Shown here piece by piece: positions 9,670-14,490 of a stretch of 59,840 bases of DNA. The DNA is taken from positions 932,966 through 992,805 of the forward strand of contig NW_024055461.1 in NCBI RefSeq assembly GCF_902713615.1. Reading direction: 5' to 3'. A program made the position numbers and the translations under genes. Under the pieces are notes generated by a model. The model worked only from the letters and a program-made list of their open reading frames with translations, did not search any database and was not told where the DNA came from. This DNA comes from Scyliorhinus canicula. Lineage: Eukaryota. Position 1 is the stretch's first letter, and every line of letters starts with the position of its first letter.

Positions 9670-12600
9670 ACCAGCTTCCTGTCCTTTTCCCAGCTCTCTG
9701 CGCTTTTCCCAGCTCTCTGATCTTTCCTCCACTTCTGTAATTTGCCCAGCTGCACCTTTCCTGGTTGTTTGCTCTTTGCCTCAGCTTCTGGAACTTTCCA
9801 CTTGCTCTTTGTGCTTTTCCCCAGAACATGGCACTTTGCCCCCTGATTATTGGCTTTGGCCCATCAATTACCACTTTTCCCCGTGTTCCTGCAGATTCTC
9901 TCTCCTGTCTGCGCTCAGCTCTCTGCCCATCTCACCTGCTCACTACTCAGCTCTCGTATTTCCCAGGCTCCCTATACTTTAACCCAGCTTTATGCCATTT
10001 CCCAGGCTCCATGTGTTCCCCCCCCCCCCCCCCCCCCACCCCAGCTCGCTACCGTTTCCCAGGCTCCCTATACTTTACCCAGCTTAATACAATTTCCCAG
10101 GCTCCGTGTGTCCCCCCCCCCCCCCACACCCCGGCCAGCTCGCTACCCATTCCGAGGCTCCCTGTGCTTTTCCCCAGCTCTCTGCCTTTTCTCAGGCTCC
10201 CTGTGCTTTTCCCCAGCTCTCTGCCTTTTCCCAGTCTCCCTGCGCTTTTCCCCAGCTCCATCTTTTCCCAGGCTCCCTGCGCTTTCCCCCCAGCTCTCTA
10301 CCTTTTCCCAGGCTCCCTGTGCTTTTCCCCATCTCTCTACCTTTTCCCAGTCTCCCTGCGCTTTTCCCCAGCTCCTTCTTTTGCCAGGCTCCCTGCACTT
10401 TCCCCCAGCTCTATCTTTTCCCAGTCTCCCTGCGCTTTTCCCCAGCTCCTTCTTTTCCCAGGCTCCCTGCACTTTTCCCCAGCTCTATACCTTTTCCCAG
10501 TTTCTCTGCGCTTTTCCCCAGCTCTATCTTTTCCCAGGCTCCCTGTGCTTTCCCCCATCTCCATATCGTCTCCCAGGCTTCCTGTGCTTTTTCCCAGCTC
10601 TCTACATTTTCCCAGGCATCCTGTGCTTTTTCCCAGCTCTCTAACTTTTCCCAGTCTCCCTGTGCTTTTCCCCAGCTCTCAGCCTTTTCCCAGTCTCCCT
10701 GCGCTTTACCCCAGCTCTCAGCCCTTCCCAGTCTCCCTCCGCTTTTCCCCAGCTCTCAGCCTTTTCCCAGGCTCCCTGTGCTTTCCCCAGCTCTCTACCT
10801 TTTCCCAGGCTCCCTGTGCTTTCCCCCAACTCTCTGCCCTTTCCCACACCCCCTGCGCTTTCCCCCAACTCTCTGCACTTTCCCAGACTCCCTGTGCCTT
10901 TCCCCAACTCTCTTCCTTTTCCCAGCCTCCCTGTGCTTTTCCCCAGCTCCATCCTTTCCAAGGCCCCCTGCGCTTTCCCCCCAGCTCTCTACCTTTTCCC
11001 AGGCTCACTGCACTTTTCCCCAGCTCTCTGCATTTTCCCAGTCTCCCTGCGCTTTTCCCCAGCTCCTTCTTTTCCCAGGCTTCCTGCACTTTTCCCCAGC
11101 TCTCTACCTTTTCCCAGTCTCCCTGCGCTTTCCCCCAGCTCTATTTTTTCCCAGTCTCCCTGCGCTTTTCCCCAGCTCCTTCTTTTCCAAGGCTCCCTGC
11201 ACTTTACCCCAGCCCTATACCTTTTCCCAGTCTCCCTGCGCTTTTCCCCAGCTCTATCTTTTCCTAGGCCCCCTGTGCTTTCCCCCAGCTCCTTCTTTTC
11301 CCAGTCTCTCTGCGCTTTTCCCCAGCTCTATCTTTTCCCAGTCTCCCTGCGCTTTTCCCCAGCTCCTTCTTTTCCCAGGCTCCCTGCACTTTACCCCAGC
11401 CCTATACCTTTTCCCAGTCTCCCTGCGCTTTTGCCCAGCTCTATCTGTTCCCAGGCTCCCTGTGCTTTCCCCCAGCTCCATATCGTCTCCCAGGCTTCCT
11501 GTGATTTCCACAGCTCTCTACCTTTTCCCAGGCATCCTGTGCTTTTCCCCAGCTCTCTACCTTTTCCCAGGCATCCTGTGCTTTTTCCCAGCTCTCTACC
11601 TTTTCCCAGGCTTCCTGTGCTTTTCCCCAGCTCTCAGCCTTTTCCCAGGCTCCCTGTGCTTTCCCCAGCTCTCTACCTTTTCCCAGGCTCCCTGTGCTTT
11701 CCCCCAACTCTCTGCCCTTTACCACACCCCCTGCGCTTTCCCCCAACTCTCTGCCCTTTCCCAGACTCCCTATGCTTTTCCCCAACTCTCTGCCTTTTCC
11801 CAGCCTCCCTGTGCTTTTCCCCAGCTCCATCCTTTCCAAGGCTCCCTGCGCTTTCCCCCCAGCTCGCTACCTTTTACCAGGCTCCCTGCACTTTTCCCCA
11901 GCTCTCTGCATTTTCCCAGTCTCCCTGCGCTTTTCCCCAGCTCCTTCTTTTCCCAGGCTTCCTGCACTTTTCCCCAGCTCTCTACCTTTTCCCAGTCTCC
12001 CTGCGCTTTTCCCCAGCTCTATTTTTTCCCAGTCTCCCTGCGCTTTTCCCCAGCTCCTTCTTTTCCCAGGCTCCCTGCACTTTACCCCAGCTCTATACCT
12101 TTTCCCAGTCTCCCTGCGCTTTTCCCCAACTCTATACCTTTCCCAGTCTCCCTGCGCTTTTCCCCAGCTCTATCTGTTCCCAGGCTCCCTGTGCTTTCCC
12201 CCAGCTCCATATCGTCTCCCAGGCTTCCTGTGATTTTCCCCAGCTCTCTACCTTTTCCCAGGCATCCTGTGCTTTTTCCCAGCTCTCTACCTTTTCCCAG
12301 GCATCCTGTGCTTTTTCCCAGCTCTCTACCTTTTCCCAGGCATCCTATGCTTTTTCCCAGCTCTCTACCTCTCCCAGGCTTCCTGTGCTTTTCCCCAGCT
12401 CTCAGCCTTTTCCCAGGCTCCCTGTGCTTTCCCCAGCTCTCTACCTTTTCCCAGGCTCCCTGTGCTTTCCCCCAACTCTCTGCCCTTTCCCACACCCCCT
12501 GCGCTTTCCCCCAACTTTCTGCCCTTTCCCAGACTCCCTGTGCTTTTCCCCAACTCTCTGCCTTTTCCCAGCCTCCCTGTGCTTTTCCCCAGCTCCATCC

Positions 12601-14490
12601 TTTCCAAGGCTCCCTGCGCTTTCCCCCCAGCTCTCTACCTTTTACCAGGCTCCCTGCACTTTTCCCCAGCTCTCTGCATTTTCCCAGTCTCCCTGCGCTT
12701 TTCCCCAGCTCCTTCTTTTCCCAGGCTTCCTGCACTTTTCCCCAGCTCTCTACCTTTTCCCAGTCTCCCTGCGCTTTCCCCCAGCTCTATTTTTTCCCAG
12801 TCTCCCTGCGCTTTTCCCCAGCTCCTTCTTTTCCCAGGCTCCCTGCACTTTACCCCAGCTCTATACCTTTTCCCAGTCTCCCTGCGCTTTTCCCCAACTC
12901 TATCTTTTCCCAGGCTCCCTGTGCTTTCCCCCAGCTCCATATCGTCTCCCAGGCTTCCTGTGATTTTCCCCAGCTCTCTACCTTTTCCCAGGCATCCTGT
13001 GCTTTTTCCCAGCTCTCTACCTTTTCCCAGGCATCCTGTGCTTTTTCCCAGCTCTCTACCTTTTCCCAGGCATCCTGTGCTTTTTCCCAGCTCTCTACCT
13101 TTTCCCAGGCTTCCTGTGCTTTTCCCCAGCTCTCTACCTTTTCCCAGGCTCCCTGCGCTTTCCCCCCAGCTCTCTACATTTCCCCAGGCTCCCTGTGCTT
13201 TTCCCCGTCTGTCTACCTTTTCCCAGGCTCCCTGCACTTTTCCCCAGCTCTCTGCATTTTCCCAGTCTCCCTGTGCTTTTCCCCAGCTCCTTCTTTTCCC
13301 AGGCTCTTTGCACTTTTCCCCAGCTCTATACCTTTTCCCAGTCTCCTTGCGCTTTTCCCCAGCTCTATCTTTTCCCAGCCTCCCTGTGCTTTCCCCCATC
13401 TCCATATCGTCTCCCAGGCTTCCTGTCATTTTCCCCAGCTCTCTACCTTTTCCCAGGCTTCCTGTGATTTTCCCCAGCTCTCTACCTTTTCCCAGGCATC
13501 CTGTGCTTTTTCCCAGCTCTCTACCTTTTCCCAGGCATCCTGTTCTTTTTCCCAGCTCTCTACCTTTTCCCAGGCATCCTGCGCTTTTTCCCAGCTGTCT
13601 ACCTTTTCCCAGTCTCCCTGCGCTTTTCCCCAGCTCTCAGCGTTTTCCCAGTCTCCCTGTGCTTTTCCCCAGCTCTCAGCCTTTCCCAGTCTCCCTACGC
13701 TTTTCCCCAGCTCTCAGCCTTTCCCCAGGCTCCCTGCGCTTTTCCCCAGCTCTCAGCCTTTTCCCGGGCTCCATGAGCTTTCGCGCCGCTTCCTGCATTT
13801 TCCGGACTCCTTTTGCTTTCCTCCAGCTCTCAAACGTTTCCCAGGCTCCCTGTCCTATTCCCCCAACTATCTGCCCTTTCCCAGATTCCCTGCTCTTTCC
13901 CCCAACTCTCTGCCTTTTCCCAGGCTCCCCGCACGTTTCACCAGCTTTCTACTCTTTCCCAGGCTCCCCGCACGTTTTCCCAGCTTTCTACCTTTTCCCA
14001 GGCTTATGCGCTTTCCCCCAAACCTCTACCTTTTCCCAGGCTCCCTGTACTTTCTCCAGATCGCTGCCTTTTCCCAGTCTCCCTGTGCTTTTCCCCAACT
14101 CTCTACCTTTTCCCAGGCTCCCTGTGCTTTCCCCCGGCTCTCTATATTTTCCCAGGCTCCCTATGCTTTCCCCCAGCTCTCTATATTTTCCCAGTCTCCC
14201 TGTGCTTTTCCCCAACTCTCTACCTTTTCCCAGGCTCCCTGTCCTTTCCCCAGCTCTCTATATTTTCCCAGGCTCCCTATGCTTTCCCCCAGCTCTCTAT
14301 ATTTTCCCAGGCTCCCTGTGCTTTTCCCCAGCTCTCTGCCTTTTCCCAGGCTCCCTGTCCTTTCCCCAACTCTCTATATTTTCTCAGGCTCCCCGCAGGT
14401 TTCCACAGCTCTCTGCCTTTTCCGAGGCTTCCCGCACATTTCCACATCTCTCTACCTTTTCCAGGGCTCTCTGCTCTATTCCATGACTCT
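9670..14490 (-). repeat. 39-bp tandem array, G-rich on the Ig sense strand, GAGCTGGGG-containing (switch-region-like)
   Basis: Plus-strand unit ttttcccaggctccctgtgcttttccccagctctctgcc, on the order of 110 units; degenerate edges at 9670-10140 and 13750-14490. Confidence 0.95.

What the first reader, a model, noticed from the sequence alone, without database searches (positions are those of the whole stretch)
9670..14490. Switch-region-like GAGCTGGGG array immediately upstream of shark Cmu1
Seen: ~4.8 kb of 39-bp units ending ~0.7 kb before the Cmu1 acceptor. The sense (non-template) strand reads GGCAGAGAGCTGGGGAAAAGCACAGGGAGCCTGGGAAAA, so most units contain AGCT within GAGCTGGGG plus three G-runs of 3 or more. 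Established: mammalian Smu is built from GAGCT and GGGGT, lies in the J-C intron upstream of Cmu, has a G-rich non-template strand that forms R-loops/G4, and AGCT is the overlapping AID hotspot. Canonical class switching is considered tetrapod; nurse shark shows AID-associated switching between IgH clusters without recognised classical S regions. Inference: position, polarity, motif and size all match an S region, so this could be an undescribed shark switch substrate for inter-cluster VDJ-to-C exchange, either ancestral or convergent.
Basis: partly seen in the sequence, partly recalled or inferred. Interest (0 to 1): 0.92.

Follow-up and report, generated by a model that had tools for sequence, protein, structure and literature searches.

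The report
Switch-region-like repeat array upstream of shark Cmu1
A shark IgM gene cluster carries, just upstream of its first constant exon, a 4.3-4.8 kb repeat array with the sequence hallmarks of a mammalian antibody class-switch region, a structure reviews say sharks lack, but whether B cells use it for switching could not be tested here.

Summary
A 39-bp tandem array lies at 10135-14473 (112.8 copies). A degenerate edge extends it to 9671.

- **Position.** It sits in the 3' third of a 15.7 kb JH-Cmu1 intron of a germline, unjoined IgM cluster on the minus strand. It ends 675 bp before Cmu1.
- **Composition.** The sense strand is 44% G and 12% C, with 97 AGCT (8.9 expected from composition) and 68 exact GAGCTGGGG.
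- **R-loop prediction.** The array holds 228 of the window's 231 predicted sense-strand R-loop-forming sites.
- **Copy number.** The motif occurs nowhere else in the 59.8 kb window. In DNA runs its word depth is only about 1-5x that of the flanks, so it is low-copy rather than a genome-wide satellite. A related species holds near-identical pieces.
- **Other scan notes.** Unchecked first-reader notes report similar arrays upstream of Cmu1 on at least 12 other pieces of this genome, and one upstream of an IgW CH1 exon.

Function is untested. Four points count against it:
- The array starts 10.2 kb downstream of JH, with no demonstrated nearby promoter.
- The AGCT cytosine is not preferentially conserved among units.
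- Canonical G4 motifs are rare.
- No somatic junction data were obtainable.

Verdict: a real, Ig-associated array that resembles a switch region in sequence. Its use as a switch substrate is plausible (about 0.45) but unproven. The primary shark-switching paper (Zhu 2012) could not be read, so novelty is provisional.

The parts
10135..14473 (-). Core array: about 112 units of 39 bp, each made of two ~19-20 bp half-units. The sense strand is G-rich and carries AGCT. It includes a ~770-880 bp block present three times at 97.5-99% identity.
9671..10134 (-). Degenerate Cmu1-proximal edge of the array: 19-bp units, then 94-95 bp units that carry very long G-runs on the sense strand (long C-runs on the plus strand at about 10018-10040 and 10112-10127).
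8996..9670 (-). Non-repetitive 675 bp spacer between the array and the Cmu1 acceptor. Composition is ordinary (AGCT 1.3 per kb, G 23%).
8701..8995 (-). Cmu1 exon. The acceptor AG is at 8997-8996. RNA contigs join JH sequence to it.
24689..24740 (-). Germline JH segment (WGQGTMVTVT) with an upstream heptamer. The splice donor GT is at 24688-24687. This defines the 5' end of the 15,693 bp J-C intron.
14474..14700 (-). Unique purine-rich ~200 bp stretch where the strand skew flips, immediately upstream of the array on the J side. No CpG island and no octamer motif.
15663..17591 (-). Second array in the same intron. It is C-rich on the sense strand (CTCAC/CCCAC-type units, skew -0.91) and has no AGCT. 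CTCAC-like sequence continues down to about 14700, interrupted by a palindromic element. Predicted R-loop sites here are on the antisense strand only.

Best explanation
The array is a low-copy minisatellite tied to Ig clusters. It occupies the Smu-equivalent position of a shark IgM cluster and has the sequence properties that make mammalian switch regions work: kilobases of short tandem units, 44% G with dense G-clusters on the non-template strand, and one AGCT hotspot per unit.

Proposed mechanism (inferred, not shown):
1. When the rearranged cluster is transcribed, the G-rich nascent RNA re-anneals to the C-rich template and forms R-loops across the array.
2. The displaced strand and stalled polymerase give AID access to AGCT and other WRC sites.
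3. Closely spaced lesions become double-strand breaks.
4. Breaks in the arrays of two clusters are joined, which puts a VDJ onto another cluster's constant region.

This would be the inter-cluster switching reported for nurse shark. On this reading the array is the preferred breakage zone of the J-C intron.
For: Shown:
- Position, polarity, size and motifs.
- AGCT is 11-fold above composition expectation, and WGCW is 170 observed against 50 expected.
- 97.5% of 100-nt windows have at least 35% G, and 228 of the window's 231 sense-strand R-loop-forming predictions fall in the array.
- These values sit inside the experimentally defined range: an R-loop elongation zone of 35-50% G, with 46% G supporting switching and 29% not (PMC4245955).
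- GAGCTGGGG is also part of the mouse Smu 20-mer (PMC11897869).
- The array is not a genome-wide satellite, and near-identical pieces exist in a related species.
- Recent internal block duplications at 97.5-99% identity show recombinational activity.

Leads, unchecked:
- Similar arrays upstream of Cmu1 on at least 12 other pieces of this genome.
- A 29-bp AGCT-dense variant, and one array upstream of IgW CH1.
- One RNA contig joins a repeat-unit-like sequence exactly to the Cmu1 exon boundary. It is absent from this window.
- In that RNA run the depth relative to DNA is several-fold lower just upstream of the array than inside it.
Against: - No somatic junctions, mutations, R-loops or AID dependence could be examined.
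- The array begins 10.2 kb downstream of JH, about 11-12 kb from the V promoter. Somatic hypermutation normally fades within about 2 kb (established knowledge), and longer promoter-to-repeat distance lowers R-loops and switching (PMC4245955).
- No octamer, CpG island or other promoter sign was found upstream of the array.
- The AGCT cytosine is among the less conserved positions of the unit (0.79; C>T in 15 of 112 units). There is therefore no sign of selection on the hotspot itself.
- AGCT density (20 per kb) is below the 50 per kb of the synthetic switch regions.
- Canonical G4 motifs are rare.
- Presence in many clusters could simply reflect duplication of whole clusters.
- Reviews state that shark loci lack S regions.
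Confidence: 0.45

Rival explanations
1. The array is a neutral minisatellite. A purine-rich ~20-bp motif expanded by slippage and unequal crossing-over inside the long J-C intron, then spread with duplication of whole IgM clusters. Its likeness to switch regions rests on a short motif and a composition bias and has no role in B cells.
For: - Higher-order structure and 97.5-99% identical internal blocks are typical of neutrally turning-over minisatellites.
- AGCT is no better conserved than other unit positions.
- The same intron holds a second, unrelated strand-biased array without AGCT, plus further skewed simple sequence at 19.5-21 kb. This intron accumulates simple repeats in general.
- The distance from the promoter is large.
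- Reviews report no S regions in sharks.
Against: - The array is low-copy and Ig-associated, with consistent sense-strand polarity.
- Unchecked notes report arrays at the same position in many clusters, including a different 29-bp AGCT-dense unit and one at IgW. That would be unexpected for a neutral repeat.
- Pieces are retained in a related species.
Confidence: 0.35
2. The array acts on RNA or transcription rather than recombination. Dense G-runs close to the Cmu1 acceptor could work as intronic splicing enhancers or as polymerase-pausing and R-loop elements. These would help define the distant Cmu1 exon across a 15.7 kb intron or tune cluster expression.
For: - About 2.6 G-triplets per 39 bp, ending 0.7-1.1 kb from the acceptor.
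- G-run clusters are established intronic splicing enhancers (general knowledge).
- The array contains 29 copies of AAG|GTAGAG, which resembles a splice donor.
- One RNA contig joins a repeat-like exon to Cmu1.
Against: - Splicing enhancers act within tens to hundreds of bases of a splice site, not over 4-5 kb.
- No expression or splicing data could be obtained.
- This does not explain the AGCT periodicity.
Confidence: 0.12
3. The array, or its length and internal order, is an assembly artefact of a collapsed or mis-expanded repeat.
For: - Short-read contigs laid on the array show many alternative joints that skip 0.4-3.5 kb.
- The triplicated near-identical blocks are the kind of structure assemblers can get wrong.
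Against: - Independent DNA runs from two samples and an RNA run all hold array sequence at 99% or better.
- Both unique flanks are covered and continuous with the array edges.
- Other clusters reportedly carry arrays of 2.6-7.8 kb (unchecked).
- At most the exact copy number is uncertain.
Confidence: 0.03

Closest known systems
Mammalian Smu (mouse and human IgH mu switch region)
   Same: - Lies in the J-Cmu intron upstream of Cmu1.
- Kilobases of short tandem repeats.
- G-rich non-template strand.
- AGCT hotspots embedded in GAGCT followed by a G-run; GAGCTGGGG occurs in the mouse 20-mer GAGCTGAGCTGGGGTGAGCT.
- Predicted R-loop formation.
   Different: - The unit is 39 bp (two ~20 bp halves) with A-runs, giving one AGCT per unit (20 per kb). 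The pentamer-based Smu core is much denser in AGCT (own knowledge).
- No identified Emu/Imu promoter nearby; the array is 10 kb from JH.
- There are no downstream C genes in cis to switch to, because the locus is organised as clusters.
Mammalian Sgamma regions (49-52 bp repeats)
   Same: - Repeat unit of similar length.
- G-clusters plus one to a few AGCT per unit.
- G-density around 45% and several kilobases long. In these respects this is probably the nearest structural analogue (own knowledge, with G-density values from PMC4245955).
   Different: - Sgamma regions have their own cytokine-inducible I promoter a few hundred bp upstream.
- They are acceptor regions in a deletional translocon locus. 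Neither feature is shown here.
Xenopus Smu (amphibian switch region)
   Same: - Tandem repeats rich in AGCT upstream of Cmu.
- Accepted as the earliest canonical S region (reviews).
   Different: [quoted passage not shown] The shark array is 56% G+C with strong G-skew, so it is mammalian-like rather than amphibian-like.
Nurse shark inter-cluster isotype switching (Zhu et al. 2012; Zhang et al. 2013)
   Same: - Same kind of locus (autonomous V-D-D-J-C clusters).
- This process would be the array's presumed use: a VDJ from one cluster expressed with the C region of another, concomitant with hypermutation (as summarised).
   Different: - According to every review read here, that work reported no S regions or cryptic promoters.
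- The species differs: the closest named relative here is Scyliorhinus.
- The primary papers could not be read.
GC-skewed R-loop-forming minisatellites outside Ig loci
   Same: Tandem G-rich units, predicted co-transcriptional R-loops, and instability by unequal exchange.
   Different: Such repeats are scattered across the genome. They are not tied to one gene family, one intron position and one orientation, as this array appears to be.

Membership tests
Immunoglobulin class-switch (S) region, mammalian type | Lies in the intron between J (or an I exon) and the first exon of a heavy-chain constant gene | tested here: met
   The intron runs 24688..8996 on the minus strand, and the array at 14490..9671 lies inside it, 675 bp from Cmu1.
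Immunoglobulin class-switch (S) region, mammalian type | 1-12 kb of tandemly repeated short units | tested here: met
   4.3 kb core (4.8 kb with the edge), period 39, 112.8 copies.
Immunoglobulin class-switch (S) region, mammalian type | Non-template strand G-rich (about 35-50% G) with G-clusters | tested here: met
   G is 44% and G-skew +0.57, with 67 runs of three or more G per kb. 97.5% of 100-nt windows have at least 35% G. Thresholds are from PMC4245955.
Immunoglobulin class-switch (S) region, mammalian type | High density of AID hotspots, especially AGCT/WGCW | tested here: met
   97 AGCT against 8.9 expected, and 170 WGCW against 50 expected. This is 5-7 times the local background. Density (20 per kb) is lower than the synthetic 50 per kb regions, and AGCT is not preferentially conserved.
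Immunoglobulin class-switch (S) region, mammalian type | Own upstream germline (I) promoter and sterile transcript spliced to the C exons | tested here: inconclusive
   No octamer or CpG island upstream. One RNA contig joins a repeat-like sequence exactly to the Cmu1 boundary, and RNA-to-DNA depth is lower just upstream of the array. The raw RNA runs were uninformative.
Immunoglobulin class-switch (S) region, mammalian type | Forms R-loops in transcribing B cells | not testable with these tools
   Sequence prediction only: 228 of 231 sense-strand R-loop-forming sites in the window lie in the array.
Immunoglobulin class-switch (S) region, mammalian type | AID-dependent somatic breaks and recombination junctions fall within it | not testable with these tools
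   DNA runs are available only as contigs, which drop rare variants. The joints seen are repeat mis-joins or other germline copies.
Immunoglobulin class-switch (S) region, mammalian type | Part of a translocon with several downstream C genes in cis, each with its own S region (deletional switching) | tested here: not met
   There is one V-D-D-J-C cluster and no second C gene in 59.8 kb. Upstream sequence is LINE debris. Any use would have to be between clusters.
Amphibian-type S region | AT-rich tandem repeats with AGCT palindromes and no G-skew | tested here: not met
   G+C is 56% and G-skew +0.57.
Ordinary dispersed satellite or TE-borne minisatellite | High copy number at many unrelated loci, in either orientation | tested here: not met
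   Summed word depth over the array is about 1-5x that of the flanks in two DNA runs. There are no hits elsewhere in the window. The proximal flank matches nothing else in the window; the distal flank's matches are to the neighbouring C-rich array and to a dispersed palindromic element, and none involves the 39-bp array itself. A whole-genome census was not possible.

The most novel reading that the evidence does not exclude
Mammalian-type, R-loop-prone, AGCT-bearing switch regions exist in cartilaginous fish. They sit upstream of the first constant exon of IgM clusters, and possibly IgW clusters, and are the physical substrate of AID-driven inter-cluster switching. If so, S regions either predate the translocon locus and tetrapods or arose convergently under the same mechanistic constraints.
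Probability: 0.35. Interest if true: 0.9.

Novelty: new variant of a known kind. Interest (0 to 1): 0.72.

Why it matters
Textbook and review accounts place the origin of switch regions in amphibians. They describe shark switching as occurring without S regions. G-rich, R-loop-forming S regions are treated as a later, mammalian refinement (discussion).

A G-rich AGCT array in the Smu position of shark IgM clusters would change that picture. It would mean the DNA substrate for AID-targeted recombination is older than the translocon locus, or that it evolved twice.

It also gives the open question of how shark clusters exchange constant regions a concrete region to test, for junction mapping, R-loop mapping and S-region replacement assays. 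If the array proves neutral, it is still a useful warning that sequence resemblance to an S region can arise by chance in Ig introns.

Tried and rejected
**Fetching other clusters or species.** A Cmu1 protein search found only four proteins, the best named ones from Scyliorhinus torazame. Their genomic DNA could not be delivered because the files are too large. No direct comparison of paralogous or orthologous introns was therefore possible.

**Raw RNA reads (X21-X24).** Laid on 8900-14899, they gave 0-6 reads. These libraries hardly express IgM, so they are no test of transcription, strand or splicing.

**Joints in short-read DNA contigs within the array.** I rejected these as evidence of somatic deletion. 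Contigs collapse repeats and also derive from other germline copies.

**Coding and RNA-family checks.**
- Rfam over 8000-26500 gave no family.
- Pfam on the long open frames through the array, both strands, gave none. The 1462-aa frame is a repeat artefact.

**Selection on AGCT.** Unit-by-unit conservation shows no preferential retention.

**G-quadruplex claim.** It is weak under canonical loop rules.

**Promoter search.** The skew-flip region has no octamer and no CpG island.

**TE origin.** The proximal flank has no other copy in the window. The only dispersed element nearby is a palindromic insertion at 14913-15201, which is separate from the array.

**Literature.** Zhu 2012, Zhang 2013, Hsu 2016 and Matz 2021 are not held. 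All ten paper searches found no description of a shark S-like array.

**The scan's look-up by sequence** was blank.
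Full report
**What is there**

Tandem Repeats Finder reports one dominant array at 10135-14473. It has period 39, 112.8 copies and 82% matches, with a 116-117 bp higher-order period. Towards lower coordinates it decays into 19-bp units and two to three 94-95 bp units that contain very long C-runs on the plus strand.

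**Gene context**

The minus strand encodes a complete IgM constant region:
- Cmu1, exon starting at 8995 behind an AG at 8997-8996
- Cmu2 at about 8159-8512
- Cmu3 at about 7238-7594
- Cmu4 with the secretory tail at 4874-5176

Upstream lie a germline VH (about 25889-26248), two D segments flanked by heptamers, and a JH (WGQGTMVTVT) whose exon ends at 24689. RNA contigs join JH-type sequence to the Cmu1 acceptor at very high depth, so genes of this type are expressed.

The J-C intron is therefore 24688..8996, 15,693 bp, and the array occupies its 3' third. The edge of the array is 675 bp and the core 1139 bp from Cmu1. The array begins 10.2 kb downstream of the J donor.

The closest named relatives of the Cmu1 peptide are Scyliorhinus torazame proteins at 90%, 83% and 69% identity. 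The genome is probably a catshark's.

**Is it more than chance?**

Composition and hotspots on the sense strand:

| Measure | Array | Comparison |
|---|---|---|
| Base composition | G 44%, A 35%, C 12%, T 10% | G-skew +0.57 |
| AGCT per kb | 20.1 | 1.3-3.9 in the rest of the intron and window |
| AGCT count | 97 | 8.9 +/- 2.8 in composition-matched shuffles |
| WGCW count | 170 | 50 in shuffles |

- Sixty-eight copies of GAGCTGGGG are exact and all lie on the sense strand.
- The 14-mer GAGCTGGGGAAAAG with up to two mismatches occurs 122 times, every time inside the array and on the minus strand. Chance expectation is 0.6.
- About 77% of unit-sized windows contain AGCT and 60% contain GAGCTGGGG. 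There are about 2.6 G-runs of three or more per unit (293 runs over ~111 units).
- The unit is an old duplication of a ~19-20 bp half-unit (GAGCTGGGGAAAAG... and GAGCCTGGGAAAAG...).
- The array also holds a ~770-880 bp block present three times at 97.5-99% identity, so it has expanded recently by unequal exchange.

**Satellite or Ig-specific?**

Short-read DNA contigs from two samples of the same organism cover the array. Their summed word depth is roughly 1-5 times that of the unique flanks, and individual array contigs have about single-copy depth. A genome-wide satellite would stand out by orders of magnitude.

A related organism (coded B) holds 11% of the array's 31-mers, against 26% for the neighbouring exon-and-intron stretch. 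It also has contigs matching the array with only one or two differences over 120-130 nt, though with different boundaries.

The scan's own notebook lists first-reader notes of similar arrays in this genome:
- 39-bp, G-rich, AGCT-bearing arrays of 2.6-7.8 kb directly upstream of Cmu1 on at least twelve other pieces
- a 29-bp AGCT-dense variant
- one array upstream of an IgW CH1 exon
- one array noted downstream of an Ig cluster

These notes are unchecked and I could not see their sequences. They agree with the low-multiple depth but are leads, not evidence.

**How it compares with switch regions**

The Lieber laboratory defines an R-loop initiation zone of G-clusters and an elongation zone of 35-50% G. 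They showed that 46% G supports switching and R-loops where 29% does not. They also showed that a greater promoter-to-repeat distance reduces both (PMC4245955).

- The shark array has at least 35% G in 97.5% of 100-nt windows.
- With rules of the QmRLFS type, 228 of the 231 predicted sense-strand R-loop-forming sites in the whole 59.8 kb window lie inside the array.
- GAGCTGGGG is contained in the mouse Smu 20-mer GAGCTGAGCTGGGGTGAGCT (PMC11897869).
- In unit length, G-clustering and roughly one AGCT per unit, the array resembles mammalian Sgamma repeats more than the pentameric Smu core (my own knowledge, not tested).
- It is unlike the AT-rich Xenopus S regions.

**What weakens the functional reading**

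1. The array is 10.2 kb from JH. I found no octamer and no CpG island in the region upstream of it where the strand skew flips.
2. Across 112 aligned units the C of AGCT is conserved in only 79%, with C>T in 15. Most positions sit at 93-100%, so nothing shows selection on the hotspot. Much of this variation is organised in higher-order blocks, so the test is weak either way.
3. Canonical G-quadruplex motifs are rare: two with loops of 7 or less and eleven with loops of 12 or less.
4. The same intron contains a second, unrelated array at 15663-17591 with the opposite polarity and no AGCT, and more skewed simple sequence at 19.5-21 kb. This intron collects simple repeats in general.
5. Presence in many clusters may simply reflect duplication of whole clusters.

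**Hints of transcription from or through the array**

In one RNA run, held as contigs, the Cmu1 exon has depth of about 9,700 and the intron 2-55. That fits pre-mRNA.

Relative to DNA depth, RNA is several-fold lower in the 400 bp just upstream of the array than in the array and the proximal spacer. One RNA contig continues from the exact first base of Cmu1 into a sequence that does not end in AG, resembles an array unit (...AAAAAGAGCAGAGAGCTAAAA), and is absent from this window.

Together these could mean a transcript that starts or splices within an array of another cluster, analogous to a germline transcript. The array does contain 29 donor-like AAG|GTAGAG sites. This rests on one contig and on contig-level depth, and I could not follow it up. 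The four raw-read RNA runs had almost no IgM reads.

**Literature**

Every review I could read states that shark Ig loci lack switch regions and cryptic promoters. They describe inter-cluster switching in nurse shark as concomitant with hypermutation and presumably AID-driven (PMC4279169; PMC4588147; PMC8201067). Canonical S regions are dated to amphibians.

No paper in the searchable library describes an S-like array in a shark J-C intron. The primary papers are not held. These are Zhu 2012, Zhang 2013 and the Hsu 2016 review. I cannot exclude that intron repeats were described there. The novelty rating is provisional for that reason.

**Verdict**

The array is real, large, strand-polarised, low-copy and located exactly where Smu lies in tetrapods. 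At the sequence level it meets the compositional criteria of a mammalian-type switch region.

It fails one defining feature of the family: there is no translocon with downstream C genes in cis. Three further features could not be tested or were inconclusive: an I promoter, R-loops in vivo, and AID-dependent junctions. I therefore do not file it as an S region. I describe it as a switch-region-like array that would plausibly work like one.

My odds:

| Reading | Probability |
|---|---|
| Preferred AID/R-loop breakage zone for inter-cluster switching | 0.45 |
| Neutral minisatellite inherited with the clusters | 0.35 |
| Role in splicing or transcription | 0.12 |
| Assembly artefact (affecting length or order only) | 0.03 |

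The scan has noted the same kind of array before on other DNA of this genome. Those notes neither raise nor lower my score.

Noticed in passing
window 15663-17591 (CTCAC-like sequence continues to about 14700): A second tandem array in the same J-C intron has the opposite polarity. It reads GTGAG/GGGTG on the plus strand, so it is C-rich on the Ig sense strand (skew -0.91), and it has no AGCT. Predicted R-loop sites here exist only for antisense transcription. The two arrays abut at about 14700, where the skew flips sharply.
   Followed up: partly
window 8995 (RNA contig of run X13): An RNA contig joins the first base of the Cmu1 exon to a 255-nt sequence that resembles an array unit (sense ...GAAAAAGAGCAGAGAGCTAAAA) and does not end in AG. 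The sequence is not in this window. It may be a transcript spliced from an array-derived exon of another cluster, like a germline transcript.
   Followed up: partly
window 14913-15201; copies at 18586-18719, 55651-55811, 57107-57227: A ~290 bp palindromic (inverted-repeat) dispersed element, MITE-like, is inserted between the two arrays. Three further copies at 86-90% identity lie in the window.
   Followed up: partly
window 9959-10205: The Cmu1-proximal edge of the array consists of 94-95 bp units, each with a very long C-run on the plus strand (a long G-run on the sense strand). Short reads appear cut there (flags 10009-10050).
   Followed up: no
window 10741-11140, 11619-12018, 12387-12786: A ~770-880 bp higher-order block of the array is present three times at 97.5-99% identity. 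This suggests recent unequal exchange, or assembly uncertainty in copy number.
   Followed up: partly
window 51476-53986 (minus); also 40007-41025 and 58141-59361 (plus): An 836-aa open frame has endonuclease and reverse-transcriptase-like LINE features, and there are two further fragments of the same kind upstream of the VH. No second Ig cluster lies in the 33 kb upstream.
   Followed up: no
protein P0001: A protein labelled as Salmonella enterica 'hypothetical protein', on a 480-bp contig, is 86% identical to this shark Cmu1 domain. It is almost certainly shark DNA contamination in a bacterial record.
   Followed up: no
window 19500-21000: Another strongly strand-skewed stretch of simple sequence in the intron: GA/GT-rich on the plus strand, with sense skew of -0.64 to -0.70.
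   Followed up: no
window 4114-4403: A 52-bp x 5.7 tandem repeat lies just downstream of the Cmu4/secretory exon, on the way to the presumed TM exons.
   Followed up: no
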